A DNA stretch of 64,000 nucleotides from Salpingoeca rosetta (GCA_033442325.1 JAWQFM010000015.1:790335-854334), one strand, 5' to 3'; shown: positions 11,224 through 38,687, counted from the first letter of the stretch. Numbers and translations are program-made. Notes: generated from the sequence alone by a model not told the origin.

Positions 11224-11406
11224 GTAAGTTGTGCGTCCCCCTTGTGGTCTACGACGAACATGGATTGCTGACAACATCACANNNNNNNNNNNNNNNNNNN
11301 NNNNNNNNNNNNNNNNNNNNNNNNNNNNNNNNNNNNNNNNNNNNNNNNNNNNNNNNNNNNNNNNNNNNNNNNNNNNNNNNNNNNNNNNNNNNNNNNNNNN
11401 NNNNNN

Positions 11407-12022: not shown

Positions 12023-19054
<7,032 letters not shown>

Positions 19055-19829
19055 CGCCCCGCCCGCGTTGTGATGGTGATGAGGGTGATGTGGGGAAGGA
19101 ACGGTGGCTTTTGAAGCGCGAGACACACAAGCAGCACAGACAGGCGATGTTTGTGTTTGTCGCCGCTGTGGTTGGAGGGGGGCGATGTGTCAGCGCTCAA
19201 TTTGTGGTGTCGCAGACTGGAAAATCGTTGGGGCGCCGCCGCCGCGCTCCGTTCAAATCCATGAGCGATGAGTGATGGCAGTGCACTGGTGCAGGGCGTG
19301 CACGCGTGTGTTGCGGCTCATCGCTCGCGTTGACAGCAGCACCAGCCCCCGAGGGAGAGGAATCCGAACTGGGTGGATTCATCACGTATTGGTGTGTGTG
19401 TGTGTGTATGTGTGTGCGAGGAAGTTGTGTTGTGGTGTGGTGTGACAGTGAGTGAGACAACAACACTAACAGCGTCGCGGTTTTCGATGATGATGATGAT
19501 GGGTGGTTCCGAAACGGCCCCACCAAAAAGAAGCAGACAGCTGCAAGTTTCTGTTGTGGCGAGCACGATGTCAATGCCTTGATGGGTAAGAGGTTGGTGG
19601 TTTGGAACGCCTGTTTCCGTACTCATTCATCTCATGCAGTTGCTGTGGAAGGGTTGCATGCTCGAAGCTGCATTTACACGCGCATGCACACACACTCATA
19701 CAGCGTGCTTCTCACTGCGCATACCACATCACACATCATACATCATACATTACACGCAGCACACATACACACACACACATCACATCGCACACACACACAC
19801 ATCACATCACATCATACATTACACATCGC

Positions 19830-20878
19830 ATGATGGCCCACACATCGTGGCCATGTCTCTGCCTTGCTCAATGGGCGGTGCTGATTGCAGCGTTGGCTGC
19901 CGCCTTTACATCAGCGCCTGCTGCTGCTTGGGTAAACAACTTTGATGCTACCTTTGACTACTCCTGCAGCGCATTCGTTGGCGTCACCAGCGAGCACAGC
20001 AACTTGAACGGTCTGGCGCGTGCAGATGATGTGTGTGCGTGTGTGTGTGTGTGCGGATGATGATGATGATGATGATGATGTGTGTGTGTGCGTGTGTGTG
20101 TGTGTGCGGATGATGATGATGATGATGATGATGTGTGTGTGTGCGTGTGTGGATGCACTCGTGATATATTGTGATGTGTGTGTGTGTTTGTGAGTGTGAC
20201 AGCCTTTGTGCTTGTCGGGGTTGTACGCGCCTGCTTGTGCTTTGGCAACGAGGCCTTGTCTTGCAATTGGTTGCGCCGCCACAACTCACATTCTCGCCAC
20301 ATGCGTGTGCGTCCCTGTTTGGTAGAGGACCGACGATGGAGCTTCACGTGCGACACGCTTGGTGCGGGCAGCAGCACACCGACCACGTTCTTTACGGGCT
20401 ACTATTCCGAGGGATACTACGACCAGGCCATCACGTACAGCTGTGGCACCGATTTGTGTACGTCTTGCTGGTGACAACGAAGAAGAGGGTGGTGGTGATC
20501 GACATGATGCTGGTGATGGTGATGATGTGAGAGGTCAGCCAGCAACAAGCAGAGCAGGGTGAACATCCTTGACACAAAAATACACTCACACTCACACCAT
20601 GCGCATATGTCCATCCATCCCGTGCATGCATATCGACCTGAACCAGTCCTGAACCGGCTGCAGTCCCAGCACTCCAACAATTATGAGGACCGCATTTTCG
20701 CGTTTGGATGCGCATCTGCCCCTGGTGCCAAGCTCTTTGGCTGCACATACACGGGCTACCTCAACGGCATGGATGGCCTGCTCAATTTCAACGCCGCGAG
20801 CAACCAAGTCCTTGCAGGTGCGTGCGTGTGTGTCTGTTTGTTTGTTTGTTTATATGTTTGTTTGTTTGTCTGTCTGTT

Positions 20879-20919
<41 letters not shown>

Positions 20920-22712
20920 GCGTGTTTGGAGCCATGTCTATTCAGTGTCGCGTACTCTCACGCGTTCCGTGTCTGATCGTGCCTGAACCACCAATGCCAG
21001 GGCTGTCAAGCTATCATGACAGCGGCGTAAGTGAACCATGGTTTGAAATGTGTTGCCAAAGGCAATGGATTCGCGCACATGCTGTCGTCAAACCTGATTG
21101 CCAGATGTAATCTTTCACACATACACACACACCAATACAAGTCATGCACGCATGCTCACGCAAACCACACACATACACAAATGCTTGCCTTCCTCTGCAG
21201 CCGGAGGACCGCGTGTGGAGGGTGCGGTATTGCGAAGTTGGGTGTGATCTTGACGGCAACTACATCAACGACGCAACAAACCCGCGGCAGTGCACAGGTG
21301 AGGCGGTGGGGCGCAATGCCCGCGAACAGGGCGCTGTGTGTGTGTGTGTGTGTGTGTGTGTTGGCAGTAACCAGTGCATTGCCTTCGTAACCAACCACAT
21401 ACATGCACACGCGCGCGCTCACATGCACACTCACACGCACGTACAGCGCTGACGACGGCGACGCTCGGAAGCGACATTGACTTTGAGAACGCGGCAGAGG
21501 AGACGTTTGCGTCCGAATGTCCCGATTTCCAGGCGATGAAGATCTTCTACTCGGAATACGACAGCGCAACACGTGCGGGGAGCTTGCGGCCGTGCTTGTT
21601 GACGGTGCTTCAAGTGTGCGGGCGTGTTTATGCGTGAGCCTTTGCCCCTGGAAATGTGTCTAACATGCCATCTGTTCATTCACCTTATGCGTTGCTGTCA
21701 CTTACTCCCTCACACACGCATGCGCGCACACGCACACACGCATATGCACATACGCACACACGCATACGCACACCAGAGGACCGCTTGTTCCAGCTCGGGT
21801 GCAGCGCCATTGCGGATGGCGGGTCTTTCCCGCGAAACGCCTGGTCGTCAGCAACATATGGCAACCTGCAGGCGTTTTTCGACTTCACGTGCCCACCAAA
21901 CACATGTGCGTGCTTTCGTGTGGGGTGTGTGGGTGTGTGGGGGGGGTGTCTGTGTCTGTGTGTGTATGTGTATGTGTGCTTATGTGTGCTTTGCCCACAT
22001 TTTTGTTTGTATGCTCCTGTGTTGCATGTCATGCCATTTGCGCGACACACGTCACTGCCGAATCATCTCACAGAACCAGCATCACATCACCGCCACGAAC
22101 ACCCACATGTTTCCAACTGCCACAGTTGTGACTGGCATGCGTTCCCAGTTCATTTCATCATCGCTGGATCGCGCGTACTCCTTCCAGTGCAGCTCAGCCC
22201 CAAACACCGATGTCTCTACCACCACGTGCATCACCACCACCAGGAATTCGCTGTACGCAACCGTGGACGTCTTCGTCAACGAGACTTACGCAATCACCGG
22301 TGGGTGTGTGTGTGTGTGTGTGTCTGTGTCTGTGTGTCTGTGTGTCTGTCTGTGTCTGTGTCTGTGTCCGTGTCCGTGTCTGTCTGTGTCTGTGTGTTGG
22401 TGGGTATCGATGTGGTTGAAACGGTGTGACTGTTGCCGCTTGTCTCACCAATTGTCCCTTTGTCACCCTCGAGCATTACGAGTTGCTGATTGCGCTGTGC
22501 TCGGAGTATGCTCACATGCACACACACACGCACATGCACGCTTACATGTCTGCGCTCATGTGAACAATTGTCAACCTCAGGTGTCAACGCCTTGTATGAT
22601 ACGTCTGGCAATGTCGACCGCCAGTTTTCCTTGACTGCTTGCCAGGTACATGTGTGCGTTGATGTGTGCGCGTGTGTGTGTGTGGTGTAAGCGTAGATGT
22701 GCATGCGTGCGT

Positions 22713-22784
<72 letters not shown>

Positions 22785-24406
22785 TTGTGTTCAACTACTG
22801 TACGTGCACTCACTGTGAAAACGTTTTGCTGTGTACTGTGCGACAGCTGGAATGCCACACTGGATTCAGGCTTGACATTGATGGCGTGTGCCGAGGTGCG
22901 CTGGTGGTGGTGGTGGTAGTGGCAGTGGTGGAGGTGGTGTGTATTGCTTGTGTACCTGTAGTTGGTTGTTAGAATTTGGCGTATTCTCATGTACTTGTGG
23001 TGATTGGATGCTGTATAGAGATCACCACGACAACAACGACAACAACAACTACAACCACAACAACAACAACAACCACTACAACTACTACGACCACAACAAC
23101 GACAACAACAACTACAACCACAACAACAACAACAACCACTACAACTACTACGACCACAACAACAACAACCACTACAACAACCACAACAACAACCACAACA
23201 ACAACCACCACTACAACTACAACAACAACAACCACAACCACTACAACCACTACAACTACTACGACAACAACCACCACTACAACTACAACAACAACAACCA
23301 CAACCACAACCACTACAACCACTACAACTACTACGACAACAACCACTACAACAACAACCACCACTACAACTACAACCACTACAACAACAACCACTACAAC
23401 TACTACTACAACCACGACTACCACGACCACAACAACAACCACTACAACTACAACAACAACTACTACTACGACAGCAACAACAACTACTTCTACAACCACT
23501 ACAACAACAACCACAACAACAACCACTACAACTACCACCACCACTACCACAACAACAACCACTACAACTACCACCACCACTACCACAACAACGACGACGA
23601 CGACCACTACTACTACAACTACCACCACCACTACCACAACAACAACAACCACTACTACTACAACTACAACCACCACTACCACAACAACAACAACCACTAC
23701 AACTACTACTACTACAACCACGACTACCACTACAACAACAACCACTACAACAACAACAACAACCACTACAACAACAACAACCACAACAACAACAACCACG
23801 ACAACAACAACAACAACCACTACAACAACAACAACAANNNNNNNNNNNNNNNNNNNNNNNNNNNNNNNNNNNNNNNNNNNNNNNNNNNNNNNNNNNNNNN
23901 NNNNNNNNNNNNNNNNNNNNNNNNNNNNNNNNNNNNNNNNNNNNNNNNNNNNNNNNNNNNNNNNNNNNNNNNNNNNNNNNNNNNNNNNNNNNNNNNNNNN
24001 NNNNNNNNNNNNNNNNNNNNNNNNNNNNNNNNNNNNNNNNNNNNNNNNNNNNNNNNNNNNNNNNNNNNNNNNNNNNNNNNNNNNNNNNNNNNNNNNNNNN
24101 NNNNNNNNNNNNNNNNNNNNNNNNNNNNNNNNNNNNNNNNNNNNNNNNNNNNNNNNNNNNNNNNNNNNNNNNNNNNNNNNNNNNNNNNNNNNNNNNNNNN
24201 NNNNNNNNNNNNNNNNNNNNNNNNNNNNNNNNNNNNNNNNNNNNNNNNNNNNNACTACTACTACGACAACAACAACTACAACTACGACTACTACCACTAC
24301 CACGACTACGACCACTACTACTACTACCACAACAACAACAACAACGACGACGACGACGACGACGAGTACAACAACAACCACCACCACCACCACAACTACA
24401 ACGAGT

Positions 24407-24455
<49 letters not shown>

Positions 24456-25300
24456 CTACTACTACTACTACTACAACCACTACAACTACAACTACAACCA
24501 CAACTACAACTACAACCACCATCCCTTTCACGACGACGACAACCACCACAACAACACCCCCTTTTACCACGACCACAACCACCACAACAACACCCGCTTT
24601 TACCACGACCACAACCACCACAACAACACCCCCTTTTACCACGACCACAACCACCACAACAACACCCCCTTTTACCACGACCACAACCACCACAACAACA
24701 CCCCCTTTTACCACGACCACAACCACCACAACAACACCCCCTTTTACCACGACCACAACCACAACAACAACACCCCCTTTCACCACGACCACAACCACCA
24801 CAACAACGTCTTCCACCTCCACCCCATGGCCGTATTCTCTGCTCCATTCTGTCAATGCGACGGATTTCATGGCGAACCAGGTCATCACGTGCACATCTGT
24901 TTGTGCTCATTTGTGCTTGTGATTGTATGCGCACACCTCGCCTAGCAAAGACACATCTGCACCGCTATCACTGACACACCGGCGCCATCGCCAGCCTCTC
25001 TGCCTCGCTCATACCTCGCACCCTCTTCCCCATCCCTCTGCACTTCTTTCCCTTCGACTGCGCTTGCTCCCTCTCTGCGTTTTCCCTGCAGACGTGGCCT
25101 GGGTGCACGCGCTCCACCCCCGCTGCCCGCGGGTTCCTTCTCTTTGCGGGCGTCGCTACTGGCGTTCGGAAGACGGCGTGCAATCTGGGTGGCGGCTGCG
25201 ACTGCTTCCGCCTGGAGGAATGCCACGACCCTGAAGGTGTGTTGTTGACTGCTGATGTTGCTCTTCCTGTCGTTGGACGGTGCAGCTGTAATGATGTCAA

Positions 25301-25352
<52 letters not shown>

Positions 25353-25751
25353 CTGTCTGTGTCTGTGTCTGTGTCTGTGTCTGTGTGTGTGTGTGTGTGG
25401 TCGATGTTGCGGTTGCTCGCGTCCATGGTGCAATCGTATCGAGGGCATCTGTCTTGCAATTCTTTGCGCGCTCACTTTGCACATGACACGTTCGGGTTTG
25501 TTCCGCAATGCCCACATCACAGGCCTGTCGTGCATGGAGGTGTACGAGTGCGAGACAAACGCTGGTGAAGACGACAGCTGTCTTGCGTTTGACGAGTGTG
25601 GCCAGGGGAACTTCCGCATTCAGGCCATGATCCAAGTGATGTGCGATCATGGGCAACACATGGAGGCGCTGAACAGCGCACAGCTGGACGATTTCGCCAC
25701 AAGTTTCAAAACATCACTCGCCGAGGATTGCAACGGCTCTCCACTGGTGAG

Positions 25752-25785
<34 letters not shown>

Positions 25786-26694
25786 ACGTATTTGCGTCTG
25801 TGTTTGTGTGTGTATGTTGCAGCCTTTCCGCTTGTGTATGTGTTCGGAGTGTACAACAAGCTCATCATGCAAGCTGTCGTATGCGACTGACATCACATTC
25901 ACACGTACGCATGCACATATATTGCATTTGTGTGCACATTCTTAGCAATGCCACGTTAAGGCGGACACCGGCACCGATCTGACCGTTCTGGACAACAGCA
26001 CGTTTGTTGTCTCTGTCCTCAAACCAAACGTATGTCAAGTGAGAACGAGATGGGCATGGTTGATTGTTGTGTTCCGTCTTGATCACGTGTTTGGAGTCCC
26101 ACATGCGCGCTCAGACGCACACACGCGAGAAAATGCGTACACCCACATGTATGCACACAAGTGCACACATAGATATGCACACGCACATGAACACACTTAC
26201 ACTCAATCATTAACCCACTCACACGTCCTCAACCAAACAAATGTACACACACAAATGCCCAGGACATTGCTCGCCTGTCCACGTGCGCGATGTTCAACGC
26301 GTTTTCATTCAGCAACTGCAGCGTTGAGTCCGTGGAGCGGTACGATGCGGCCGCGCAGGTCATTGTCACGCAGCGGTTTGTGGTGACCGGCGTCAACGCG
26401 TCCCAGGTCAACACCACCGCCATCAAGCTGCGGCTGCTGGCCAGGCTGCCGCAGTTCAGGGCCGACCAGATTGACGTGCGCATTGAGGCTGTCAGTCGCC
26501 GCGCTGTGGACAGCGGGTTCATCGTGGTTGTGGAGTACACGGCGGACGATGAGGAGGCGGAGGATGTGGTGCAGACGGCCAACACGGTGGCCACCAACGG
26601 CACAATGACGGAGGTGGTGGAGGAAGAAACGGGCAAGACGGTGCAGACCGCACAGAGCGGCAGCGTGGCAGTGAACATGGCAACAACTACAACG

Positions 26695-26772
<78 letters not shown>

Positions 26773-27135
26773 ACTACAACTACAACAACTACAACTACAA
26801 CTGCAACAACAACAACCACGCCCGCTGTCGTGGGCAGCACGACCGTCATCTCCACGACGTCCACGGCCATCAACGGCACGAGTGGCGCCGAGTCGAAGAG
26901 CAAGTCGCGTGTGGTTGCCGGTGTGACTGCTGGCGTCTCCTTCATTGTGTGCATTGTCATCGTGGGGCTGAGCTACCTGCGCAGCTCTGATGGACAGACG
27001 CTGAAGCCAAACGCCAACAACAACGACGGCAGCACCGTCTCGATTGTGGACGGAAGCGTCTCGTTTGAGCTGCAGATGGCGGAACCCACGCAGCACTCAA
27101 ACACGTTTGACGTGCTGGATGAGGTGGACGTGTGA
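19830..27135 (+). CDS. Type I membrane mucin-like protein: signal peptide, 2x dermatopontin/amoebocyte-aggregation-factor (DERM)-like domains, poly-Thr stalk, Cys/SEA-like region, TM helix, short tail
   Basis: Signal WAVLIAALAAAFTSAPAAA then WVNNFD. Six repeats of the S-x-H..(E)DR-x-[WFY]-x-F-x-C type: SEHSNLNEDRRWSFTC, SQHSNNYEDRIFAFGC, SYHDS..EDRVWRVRYC, SEYDSAT.EDRLFQLGC, SSSLDRAYSFQC, GNVDRQFSLTAC. Thr exon at 23020-24880. TM VVAGVTAGVSFIVCIVIVGLSYL at about 26910-26980. Stop ends at 27135. Confidence 0.82.
23024..24810 (+). repeat. Coding (ACN)n poly-Thr array ending in about 8 copies of a 36-nt unit (PPFTTTTTTTTT)
   Basis: Third codon positions vary (ACA/ACC/ACT/ACG) while Thr is kept. 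A 36-nt periodicity is visible at about 24520-24810. Confidence 0.9.
23838..24253. other. Assembly gap (N run) within the Thr array
   Basis: Run of n. Confidence 0.99.
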
Positions 27136-37531: not shown

Positions 37532-38687
37532 TCACAGCCCAAACGCCGCGCCCTTTGCCCTGAGCCTCTCTGCGGACTGCTTGCGGCGGGCCATCTCCTC
37601 CCGCTTGCGCTGCTCCTCCTCGTTCTTGAGCGCCTGCTTCTGCGCCTCAAAGGGGTCGTGGTCTGTGACGGCCTTCTCCGCACGCTGCTTGATGGAGCGC
37701 GCGTGCATTTCCTGCTCCTTGAGCTGCGAGTCGTCGGAGGCGAGGAGGGCCTCGAGCTCGTGCTTGGCGCGCATGCCCTTCACGCCGCCGATGGCGATGC
37801 GTTCCTGCAGCTCCTTGATCTTGTTCTCGCGCTGCAGCTTGAGCGCGGCCATGTGTTCTTCCAGCTGCTCCGCCTTGTCCAGCTGGGCCACAAGGTCGTT
37901 CTCGCCGCGGTCCTGGAAGAGCTGCAAGCGTGCGTGATTGCGTGTGTGTGTGTGTGGGGGGGGGGGAGAGTGCGTGTGTGTGTGTGTGGGGGGGGGATTG
38001 CGTATGTGTGTGCGTGATTGTGAGAATATGGGAGTGCGCGCATGGCGTAGATAAATGGTACATGAAAAGGCACAAGCTCACACACCATTTCACACACCCT
38101 CCCCTTCACCCCCCTCCCCACTCTTCTGTACTCTGCACCATGCCAACATACCTCCGGTGCGCGCTTGTTGTATTTGAAGAGGAGAAACTCTGTGAGGGAG
38201 AGCCGGCCGTTGCAGTCCACGTCAATGGACCTAAACGCCTTTCGAAACTCCACCAGCGTCAGCGTGCGCCCTTCCTCCGTCAGCAGCCTGTTGTGCGTGT
38301 GTGTGTGAACGTGTGTGCAAACGTGTGTGTGTGTGTGTGTGCAACGACAGGTGGTGCTTCACACTTGACGCATTCAACAACACAGCATAATGTACACCAA
38401 ACGCCACACACGCACACGCACACACGCACACGCACACACGCACACGCACATCAACACACACATACACACAAGACACACACGGACACTGACTTGAGCGCCT
38501 GTGGTTCTTCTATTTCCTTGGCCTTTTGCTTGCCGGTGATGGCGTCAAACTGCTTTGCAACCGCGGCGACCTCTGTTGGGGAGATGCTGTTGCCAAAGGC
38601 GCGCACAAAGAAGTTGGCCTGCTCATCCTGCGAGCGCGTGCCAAGCTCGCGCAGCTTCGCCTTTACCTTGTCCTCACCAGCGCTCAT
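37532..38687 (-). CDS. EF-hand coiled-coil protein resembling the Dictyostelium 34-kDa calcium-regulated actin-bundling protein (ABP34/AbpB), 3 exons
   Basis: SQDEQANFFVRAF (compare FSQQAVHFLNAYW); TLTLVEFRKAFRSIDVDCNGRLSLTEFLLFKY, an EF-hand (compare LTALKRKQELREKVDVNFDGRVSFLEYLLYQY); GGVKGMRAKHELEAL (compare PGVKGLGATNMLAQI). Introns at 38288-38490 and about 37922-38151. Confidence 0.75.

What the first reader, a model, noticed from the sequence alone, without database searches (positions are those of the whole stretch)
19830..27135. Membrane-tethered tandem dermatopontin (aggregation-factor) domains on a long Thr mucin stalk in an apparently non-animal genome
Seen: signal peptide, six DR-x-aromatic-x-F-x-C type repeats (two three-repeat units, each followed by a short C..G..C linker), several hundred Thr codons, a TM helix and a short tail. 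Established: this repeat is the signature of dermatopontin and the horseshoe-crab amoebocyte aggregation factor, normally small secreted animal ECM/agglutinin proteins. In S. rosetta the lectin-plus-Thr protein Rosetteless is needed for rosette colonies. Inference: this is a surface adhesion or prey-agglutination receptor, and would place the DERM domain before animals in an architecture I do not know from them.
Basis: partly seen in the sequence, partly recalled or inferred. Interest (0 to 1): 0.85.

Follow-up and report, generated by a model that had tools for sequence, protein, structure and literature searches.

The report
Choanoflagellate dermatopontin gene, probably split mucin receptor
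This is a real gene with two dermatopontin domains in the choanoflagellate Salpingoeca rosetta (already annotated and already published as a family there), and it is probably the front half of one long, sugar-coated membrane protein that the public annotation cut in two at an assembly gap.

Summary
The window matches Salpingoeca rosetta GL832969.1 exactly, so the genome is non-animal, a choanoflagellate.

**DERM part.** Ten GT-AG exons (19830-22895) encode a signal peptide and two complete Pfam DERM domains (273 bits, E 9e-82), each followed by a 3-Cys linker. This equals the annotated PTSG_05975 (386 aa), except that the annotation ends in "VGC*".

**Known already.** DERM in choanoflagellates is in public annotation. 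It is also in Matriano et al. 2021 (10 DPT/EGF genes, called HGT candidates). That part of the claim is not new.

**What may be new** is a gene-model correction.
- The Thr run is under coding constraint: 361 codons, 5 changes at codon positions 1-2 against 193 at position 3.
- The run has no ATG of its own. It reads in frame only when spliced from exon 10 at 23019.
- After the gap it runs, with no stop, into the annotated 445-aa downstream gene, which carries the TM helix.
- Paralog PTSG_10372 has DERMx2 and the same downstream Cys module in one protein.

My probability for one ~1,450-aa type I DERM-mucin is about 0.7. Function is inferred only. Interest is modest.

The parts
19830..20010 (+). 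Exon 1: start codon, signal peptide, and the first ~25 residues of DERM domain 1
   Evidence: ORF and GT donor. Identical to P0001 residues 1-60. Hydrophobic window at residues 6-10 onward.
20326..21297 (+). Exons 2-5 (20326-20457, 20647-20817, 26-nt microexon 21001-21026, 21201-21297): rest of DERM domain 1 and 3-Cys linker 1
   Evidence: GT-AG sites, frame open. Pfam DERM: E2 29.8 bits on profile 30-70, E3 51.7 bits on profile 73-127. Whole-protein stretch 36-185 covers profile 1-152.
21447..22645 (+). Exons 6-9 (21447-21572, 21777-21905, 22126-22299, 22581-22645): DERM domain 2, divergent, with the S-x-H-x-N..E motif residues largely lost
   Evidence: Pfam DERM: E6 13.8 bits (profile 1-26), E7 24.6 (30-70), E8 36.5 (73-128). 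Second stretch. 21% identity to domain 1.
22847..22895 (+). Exon 10: end of 3-Cys linker 2 (LECHTGFRLDIDGVCR), with a phase-1 donor
   Evidence: The same '...DGVCR' is followed by further domains in paralog P0003.
22962..22972 (+). Annotated terminal exon of PTSG_05975 ('VGC' plus stop); probably not the main acceptor
   Evidence: It implies a 66-nt intron, whereas all 14 other introns here are 123-315 nt.
23019..23837 (+). Proposed exon 11, part before the gap: 'EI' then 269 Thr of 272 codons
   Evidence: AG acceptor in the frame set by exon 10. Codon position 3 is variable while positions 1-2 are fixed. No in-frame ATG between the upstream stop and the run (sequence).
23838..24253 (.). Assembly gap (N) inside the Thr run
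   Evidence: Both flanks are ACN runs on the same strand. Length is only estimated, so frame continuity is not testable here.
24254..24880 (+). Proposed exon 11, part after the gap: Thr run, eight 12-residue T9-P-P-F repeats (24521-24808), a short non-repeat tail; contains the annotated start ATG of the downstream gene at 24869
   Evidence: The annotated gene starts at L001 15040 = window 24869. GT donor at 24881.
25092..26029 (+). Three exons (25092-25236, 25523-25746, 25946-26029): Cys-rich module with no Pfam family
   Evidence: GT-AG sites, frame open. The chain from MANQ gives exactly the annotated 445 aa. It aligns to the C-terminal part of DERM paralog P0005 (E 3e-9). No Pfam hit.
26263..26680 (+). 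Last exon, first part: end of the Cys module and a ~100-residue alpha/beta domain next to the membrane stalk
   Evidence: Single-sequence AF2, core pLDDT 71-84 (blocks 3-10), strand-strand-helix twice. Only generic alpha/beta sandwich matches, Z 6.7 or less. No Pfam SEA.
26683..26815 (+). Second, short Thr run (44 codons, 43 of them Thr)
26911..26979 (+). Transmembrane helix (23 residues)
   Evidence: KD hydropathy 2.58 over 19 residues; the only such segment in the C-terminal part.
26980..27135 (+). 51-residue acidic cytoplasmic tail ending ...LDEVDV, and the stop codon

Best explanation
The locus is the S. rosetta gene PTSG_05975, a genuine member of the dermatopontin (DERM, PF14704) domain family with two tandem DERM domains behind a signal peptide.

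Most likely it is only the 5' half of one gene of about 1,450 codons. Exon 10 splices at 23019, not at the annotated 22962, into one very long Thr-coding exon. That exon is interrupted in the assembly by the gap. It continues through the annotated start of the downstream 445-aa model into a Cys-rich module, a small alpha/beta domain, a second Thr run, one TM helix and a 51-residue tail.

The product would be a type I membrane glycoprotein. A heavily O-glycosylated, extended Thr stalk would hold a distal pair of all-beta, three-fold-repeat DERM domains far from the cell surface, where they could bind a ligand on matrix, theca, prey or another cell.

**Shown:** the organism, the exon structure of the DERM part, DERM membership, coding constraint on the Thr run, and the TM helix.
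**Inferred:** the exon 10 to Thr-run junction, continuity over the gap, the junction to the downstream exons, glycosylation, and any binding function.
For: - **Identity and DERM.**
- **Thr run is coding.** In 361 codons there are 5 departures at positions 1-2 against 193 at position 3, binomial p 3e-84.
- **It cannot start by itself.** There is no in-frame ATG between the stop at 22973-22975 and the run. The phase-1 donor of exon 10 plus the AG at 23017-23018 gives exactly the Thr frame.
- **The annotated ending is odd.** It needs a 66-nt intron, where the 14 other introns are 123-315 nt. It also truncates right after '...DGVCR', where paralog P0003 goes on into more domains.
- **The downstream model looks 5'-truncated.** Its ATG at 24869 lies in frame inside the open Thr ORF with no stop back to the gap.
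- **A paralog carries both halves.** PTSG_10372 (P0005, in a gap-free gene) carries DERMx2 and a module that aligns to the window's downstream exons (25% identity over 137 residues, E 3e-9). It is the only one of 150 DERM hits to do so.
- **Relatives are multi-domain.** The nearest choanoflagellate DERM proteins are long multi-domain proteins, not 20-kDa ones.
- **Expression of the DERM part.** RNA-like runs from three studies hold 0.26-0.29 of the words of 19830-22895. If all ten exons and no intron are present, 0.281 is expected.
- **No read-through.** The same kind of runs hold 0.24 of the words of 22896-23100. The merged model predicts 0.30; read-through or a long 3'UTR predicts 0.62.
Against: - The public annotation has two genes.
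- The one search test is weak. Unrelated organisms hold 0.19-0.33 of the same words, so the held words are probably low-complexity. A transcript ending just after the annotated stop is not excluded.
- The downstream model begins MANQ... and has a 12-residue hydrophobic stretch (GFLLFAGVATGV) about 18 residues in, followed by basic residues. This could be a weak signal peptide of an independent gene.
- No ortholog with the whole architecture was found among the best 150 DERM hits.
- The gap could hide a stop and a new start.
Confidence: 0.7

Rival explanations
1. The annotation is right and there are two genes. One is a small secreted 386-aa tandem-DERM protein ending VGC*. The other is an independent 445-aa type I membrane mucin that starts at 24869 and uses the weak hydrophobic stretch as its signal peptide. 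The long ACN run between them is untranslated: a 3'UTR, 5'UTR or intergenic microsatellite.
For: - Public gene models.
- An AG acceptor exists at 22960-22961 with a pyrimidine-richer tract than the one at 23018 (0.67 against 0.44).
- The stretch GFLLFAGVATGV after the annotated Met has KD 1.94 over 12 residues.
- RNA word shares do not exclude a transcript that ends soon after 22972.
Against: - An untranslated run would not keep A and C fixed at codon positions 1-2 over 361 codons while position 3 varies freely.
- The ORF is open from 22976 to 24922 on this strand.
- The 66-nt intron is out of range for this gene.
- Paralog P0005 unites both halves.
- The closest paralogs continue after the second linker.
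Confidence: 0.15
2. The DERM exons are joined to the Thr run, but the product is a secreted DERM-mucin that ends inside the gap or at the stop at 24920-24922 (donor 24881 not used). The TM protein downstream is a separate gene.
For: - Coding constraint and frame-compatible splicing support only the DERM-Thr junction.
- An in-frame stop follows 14 codons after the 24881 donor.
- The gap is unread.
Against: - The donor at 24881 is the one the public model itself uses to reach the downstream exons; the chain from MANQ gives exactly 445 aa.
- Paralog P0005 links DERMx2 to the downstream module.
- The post-gap Thr run shows the same constraint and would then need its own start inside the gap.
Confidence: 0.1
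3. Evolutionary rival, about origin and not about structure. The S. rosetta DERM genes did not descend from a pre-animal holozoan ancestor but were acquired laterally, as Matriano et al. 2021 propose for the DPT/Ca-EGF genes. In that case the locus says little about the ancestry of animal dermatopontin.
For: - PMC7971027 reports no orthologs in filastereans or loricate choanoflagellates.
- DERM proteins also appear in a foraminifer and a dinoflagellate transcriptome and in many marine metagenome contigs. This patchy spread fits either transfer or ancient origin with losses.
Against: - The gene has 14 spliceosomal introns with host-typical GT-rich/CA-rich polarity.
- There is a paralog family in S. 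rosetta and a relative in Microstomoeca roanoka.
- The best named hits outside choanoflagellates are animals.
- No tree was built here. It is not known whether PTSG_05975 itself is on the paper's list: it was not found in the stored, truncated supplement.
Confidence: 0.25

Closest known systems
Dermatopontin / Limulus-type hemagglutinin-amebocyte aggregation factor (Pfam DERM, PF14704)
   Same: Full-length matches to the 152-position profile, twice. Domain 1 keeps all three S-x-H-x-N-x-x-E-D-R-x-W-x-F-x-C-type motifs. It is 31-37% identical to mollusc, hagfish and ostracod proteins named dermatopontin-like or HAAF-like.
   Different: The animal prototypes are single-domain secreted proteins of about 170-200 aa. 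Here there are two domains in tandem, the second having lost the His/Asn/Glu of the motif. Each is followed by a 3-Cys linker, and they probably sit on a >450-Thr stalk with a TM anchor.
S. rosetta paralogs PTSG_10372 (P0005) and PTSG_12546 (P0003); Microstomoeca roanoka P0004
   Same: Same N-terminal layout: signal peptide, DERM, linker, DERM, linker (37-43% identity over the whole 350 residues for P0005 and P0003). P0005 also shares the downstream Cys module.
   Different: No Thr run and no TM helix. P0003 and P0004 go on into Sushi, SUEL-lectin and NHL repeats. P0005 ends after two Cys modules.
The 'DPT/Ca2+ EGF' genes of Matriano et al. 2021 (PMC7971027)
   Same: Same organism and same DERM family. 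The paper already discusses a role in adhesion and theca.
   Different: Those listed in the stored supplement carry PF07645 EGF_CA as well (for example PTSG_12719). This gene has no Pfam EGF hit at E<=1, and it was not found in the stored, truncated part of the supplement.
Animal membrane-tethered mucins (MUC1 type); compared from my own knowledge of the family
   Same: Signal peptide, very long Thr-rich stalk, a small globular domain near the membrane, one TM helix, a short tail.
   Different: No SEA domain detected by Pfam or by fold (only a 0.78 language-model lead). A distal DERM pair is not a feature of animal mucins. This is resemblance of design, not homology.
TM-anchored DERM proteins found here: Bolivina argentea P0118, metagenome P0033 and P0057, and P0092 (Pro/Thr/Ser stalk plus C-terminal hydrophobic end)
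   Same: DERM pairs tethered by a C-terminal hydrophobic helix. P0092 also has a mucin-like stalk.
   Different: The DERM domains sit next to the membrane or after other domains (a PLC-like domain, and a domain I did not identify). There is no pure poly-Thr run. The taxa are unknown or non-holozoan. Transcriptome contamination is not excluded.

Membership tests
DERM / dermatopontin domain family (PF14704) | Match to the Pfam profile above the gathering score (28.3 bits), over the full profile length | tested here: met
   P0001: 273.2 bits, E 8.8e-82, two stretches, the best covering profile 1-152. Single exons score up to 51.7 bits.
DERM / dermatopontin domain family (PF14704) | Three internal repeats per domain with the S-x-H-x-N-x-x-E-D-R-x-[WF]-x-[FV]-x-C signature | tested here: met
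   Domain 1 has S21/H23/N25/E28-D29-R30, S78/H80/E85-D86-R87 and S132/H134/E139-D140-R141, at columns invariant or 90% or more conserved in 37 sequences. Domain 2 keeps only D-R-x-aromatic and Cys.
DERM / dermatopontin domain family (PF14704) | Significant similarity to experimentally named animal members (dermatopontin, HAAF) | tested here: met
   phmmer E 1e-20 to 1e-23 to proteins named dermatopontin-like or HAAF-like by NCBI. These names are themselves by homology; the original bovine, human and Limulus proteins were not fetched.
Dermatopontin proper (the animal ECM protein) | Small (about 20 kDa) single-domain secreted protein | tested here: not met
   Two domains plus linkers even in the annotated 386-aa model. 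Probably about 1,450 aa with a TM helix.
Dermatopontin proper (the animal ECM protein) | Binding of collagen/decorin/integrin, or cell agglutination | not testable with these tools
   No functional data. No paper names this gene.
Membrane-tethered mucin (MUC1 type) | Long Pro/Thr/Ser-rich O-glycosylation region in the ectodomain | tested here: met
   269 + 162 + 43 Thr in three runs. Glycosylation itself was not tested.
Membrane-tethered mucin (MUC1 type) | SEA domain next to the membrane | tested here: not met
   No Pfam SEA at E<=10 or E<=1. The fold search of the 139-residue piece gives only generic alpha/beta sandwiches with Z 6.7 or less. The model is of middling quality (pLDDT 66), so absence is not proven.
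Membrane-tethered mucin (MUC1 type) | Single TM helix and cytoplasmic tail on the same polypeptide as the stalk | tested here: inconclusive
   The TM helix and tail are present. The short second Thr run is on the same exon. Linkage of the long run and the DERM pair to them is inferred, not read.
Calcium-binding EGF (PF07645), as in the published 'DPT/Ca-EGF' genes | Pfam EGF_CA match in the linkers | tested here: not met
   Only DERM is reported for P0001 at E<=1. The linkers have three Cys, not six.

The most novel reading that the evidence does not exclude
A choanoflagellate displays a lectin-like DERM pair at the tip of a mucin stalk more than 100 nm long, on a transmembrane anchor, and uses it for cell-substrate, cell-cell or prey adhesion. 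Together with TM-anchored DERM proteins in Foraminifera and marine protist transcripts, this would mean the DERM domain began as a protist cell-surface adhesin module. The small secreted animal dermatopontin/HAAF would then be a later, released derivative.
Probability: 0.12. Interest if true: 0.55.

Novelty: new variant of a known kind. Interest (0 to 1): 0.3.

Why it matters
If the merged model holds, two 'hypothetical proteins' of a key model organism for animal origins become one candidate surface adhesion receptor. It would have a clear, testable design: a distal DERM pair, a mucin stalk, and a TM anchor.

It would also show that assembly gaps inside Thr runs hide such receptors from the S. 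rosetta proteome used in comparative studies. Domain-architecture counts for 'animal' ECM domains in choanoflagellates would then be biased.

The presence of DERM outside animals is not news. It is already annotated and published.

Tried and rejected
1. **Read laying on 19700-23200.** No letters of 19766-19801 were sent to any search tool afterwards.
2. **Word-share test on 22896-23100.** It excludes read-through or a long 3'UTR. Otherwise it is weak, because unrelated organisms hold as many of the low-complexity words.
3. **Exact scan of metagenome contigs for the 3' end of exon 10.** Nothing found.
4. **The search for homologous proteins with the last exon.** No hit, not even the annotated 445-aa protein. 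No protein id for the downstream half could be obtained, so it was only analysed exon by exon and in scripts.
5. **Homology across the annotated Met.** I tested whether the stretch around it (SSTSTPW...CFRLEEC) is a degenerate copy of the Cys module, which would prove the CDS runs through the Met. The local alignment score was 25, against shuffles of 22.5 +/- 4.3, p 0.27. Rejected.
6. **SEA-domain reading of the juxtamembrane piece.** There was only a 0.78 language-model lead, with no Pfam or fold support. Dropped.
7. **Solved relatives of DERM.** None by sequence or Foldseek. VIA-align gives Z 6.4 (rmsd 3.9, 117 aligned) to a Vip3A C-terminal domain and Z 2-2.7 to jacalin-type lectins. This is too weak to name a fold relative.
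8. **EGF reading of the linkers.** No Pfam support.
9. **The spliced full-length protein.** Pfam, structure and database searches therefore used P0001 or single exons.

Full report
**Where we are.** A stop-free stretch carrying exon 8 retrieved one protein at 100% identity: PTSG_05975 of Salpingoeca rosetta (P0001, 386 aa, Pfam PF14704 precomputed). Its gene lies on GL832969.1 of GCA_000188695.1, with window coordinate = L001 coordinate + 9829. S. rosetta is a craspedid choanoflagellate.

**The DERM part.**
- I spliced the region by hand. Ten exons (19830-20010, 20326-20457, 20647-20817, 21001-21026, 21201-21297, 21447-21572, 21777-21905, 22126-22299, 22581-22645, 22847-22895) are all bounded by GT-AG and keep one frame open.
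- The product equals the public protein through residue 383.
- Single exons already hit Pfam DERM in colinear order, twice: profile 30-70, 73-127, then 1-26, 30-70, 73-128.
- The whole protein scores 273 bits, E 8.8e-82, with two stretches.
- In an alignment with 35 relatives, domain 1 keeps every conserved motif residue. Domain 2 is only 21% identical to domain 1 and has lost the His/Asn/Glu positions.
- The aligned small proteins include ones that NCBI names dermatopontin-like or hemagglutinin/amebocyte aggregation factor-like, from molluscs, hagfish and an ostracod.
- RNA-like runs from three studies hold 0.26-0.29 of the sampled 31-mers of 19830-22895. The ten exons without introns predict 0.281. 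The DERM part is therefore expressed and spliced about as modelled.

**Thr run and gap.**
- From 23021 to the gap, 269 of 272 codons are ACN. After the gap come 89 codons of Thr run (87 ACN, 2 AGT Ser). Then follow eight 12-residue T9-P-P-F repeats and a short unique tail.
- Over the 361 codons of Thr run (356 ACN), codon positions 1-2 depart from A-C 5 times, while position 3 departs from A 193 times (p 3e-84). This is the signature of selection for Thr, not of a free microsatellite.
- The frame is open from 22976 but has no in-frame ATG before the run.
- The phase-1 donor of exon 10 joined to the AG at 23017-23018 gives 'R-E-I-T-T-T...' in exactly that frame.
- The gap (23838-24253) cannot be read. 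With its nominal length the frame is kept, but that length is an estimate, so I give this no weight.

**Downstream.**
- The public annotation has a separate 445-aa gene at 24869-27135.
- My exon chain (24869-24880, 25092-25236, 25523-25746, 25946-26029, 26263-27135) gives exactly 445 aa from 'MANQ', so it is the same model.
- Its ATG sits in frame inside the open Thr ORF.
- It encodes a Cys-rich module with no Pfam family. Next comes an alpha/beta domain of about 100 residues (AF2 single sequence, core pLDDT 71-84; only generic fold matches). Then follow a 44-codon Thr run (43 Thr), a TM helix at 26911-26979 and a 51-residue acidic tail.

**One gene or two?**

For one gene:
- the coding constraint on a run that cannot start by itself;
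- the frame-compatible junction;
- the annotated ending 'VGC*', which needs a 66-nt intron where the other 14 introns are 123-315 nt;
- the closest paralog P0003, which continues after the same '...DGVCR';
- paralog PTSG_10372 (P0005, a gap-free gene), which has DERMx2 and a C-terminal region aligning to the window's downstream exons (E 3e-9). It is the only one of the 150 best DERM hits that does.

Against one gene:
- the annotation itself;
- a possible weak signal peptide after the downstream Met;
- no ortholog with the full layout;
- no junction-spanning read.

As a substitute I asked which runs hold 22896-23100. RNA-like runs hold 5 of 21 sampled words (0.24). The merged model predicts 0.30, and read-through or a long 3'UTR predicts 0.62. 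However, unrelated organisms hold 0.19-0.33 of the same words. So the test only excludes read-through. I put the single-gene model at about 0.7.

**What is known.**
- The family is already on record. The Pfam hit is attached to the public protein.
- Matriano et al. 2021 (PMC7971027) describe 10 dermatopontin/Ca-EGF genes in S. rosetta, with orthologs in craspedids and none in filastereans. They read these as HGT candidates with a possible role in adhesion or theca.
- I did not find PTSG_05975 in the stored, truncated part of their supplement. No paper names the gene.
- A full scan of 1.84 billion representatives found 884 clusters at E<=1e-3.
- The best hits are S. rosetta paralogs and Microstomoeca roanoka. 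All of these are long multi-domain proteins with Sushi, SUEL lectin, NHL or PA14.
- Further hits are animals, many marine metagenome contigs, and transcriptome proteins of a foraminifer and a dinoflagellate.
- Three of the hits have a C-terminal TM helix, and one has a Pro/Thr/Ser stalk. Tethered DERM is therefore not unique to this locus.

**Structure and mechanism.**
- DERM domain 1 folds with high confidence (pLDDT 90.7, pTM 0.86) into an all-beta domain built from three similar strand groups.
- It has no solved relative by sequence or Foldseek.
- VIA-align gives Z 6.4 (rmsd 3.9, 117 aligned) to a Vip3A C-terminal domain, and Z 2-2.7 to jacalin-type lectins. This is within the range of common arrangements.
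- The likely working model is inferred from the anatomy and from what is established for animal DERM proteins (matrix and cell binding, agglutination). A type I glycoprotein would present a distal binding module on a long, stiff, O-glycosylated stalk.
- Domain 1 is the probable binding unit. Domain 2 is degenerate at the conserved polar positions.

**Verdict.** DERM identity and non-animal origin are confirmed but already known. The tethered-mucin architecture is a plausible correction of the public gene models and remains unproven. Function is unknown beyond inference. Interest is modest.

Noticed in passing
window 21447-22645 (DERM domain 2): The second DERM domain keeps the D-R-x-aromatic...C core. 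It has lost the conserved His, Asn and Glu of all three S-x-H-x-N-x-x-E-D-R motifs (SEYDSATQDR, SQFISSSLDR, YDTSGNVDR). It may be a structural, non-binding copy.
   Followed up: partly
window 20011-22125: Intron positions repeat between the two DERM domains: a phase-1 intron just before the first [E/Q]DR, and another after the '...C-x4/5' that ends repeat 1. This fits a tandem duplication of an already split domain. Repeat 3 of domain 1 is completed by a 26-nt microexon (21001-21026).
   Followed up: partly
window 20011-26262, all 14 introns of the model: Every intron is richer in G+T in its first half than in its second: 0.48-0.86 against 0.27-0.74. The introns have (GT)n-like tracts after donors and (CA)n-like tracts before acceptors. 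This is the same polarity another note of this scan reports at 38288-38490.
   Followed up: partly
window 24521-24808: Eight tandem 36-nt units encode T9-P-[PA]-F. They form a more complex, mappable sub-repeat at the end of the Thr run and would be useful as an RT-PCR or read anchor.
   Followed up: no
P0118 (Bolivina argentea), P0010 (Gymnodinium smaydae), P0033/P0057/P0092 (metagenome or Logan contigs): DERM domains occur in transcriptome proteins labelled as a foraminifer and a dinoflagellate. Three of these five proteins have a TM anchor (P0118, P0033, P0057) and P0092 has a mucin-like stalk. The domain's range may be wider than Holozoa, or these are contaminants.
   Followed up: partly
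P0001 (public record of PTSG_05975): UniRef names the protein 'GON domain-containing protein'. Pfam finds only DERM at E<=1, so that name looks like a spurious automatic profile hit.
   Followed up: partly
window 27118-27132: The cytoplasmic tail ends in ...LDEVDV. This is a hydrophobic-x-hydrophobic C-terminus that could be a PDZ-type ligand. Pure speculation, not tested.
   Followed up: no
runs X13, X14 (seawater metatranscriptomes): Two seawater metatranscriptome runs hold about 5% of the exact 31-mers of the DERM gene region. This could be low-complexity words or a near-identical organism in the sea.
   Followed up: no
window 11282-11406: A second assembly gap lies just upstream of the minus-strand RabGAP-TBC gene model (window about 12023-19054).
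   Followed up: no
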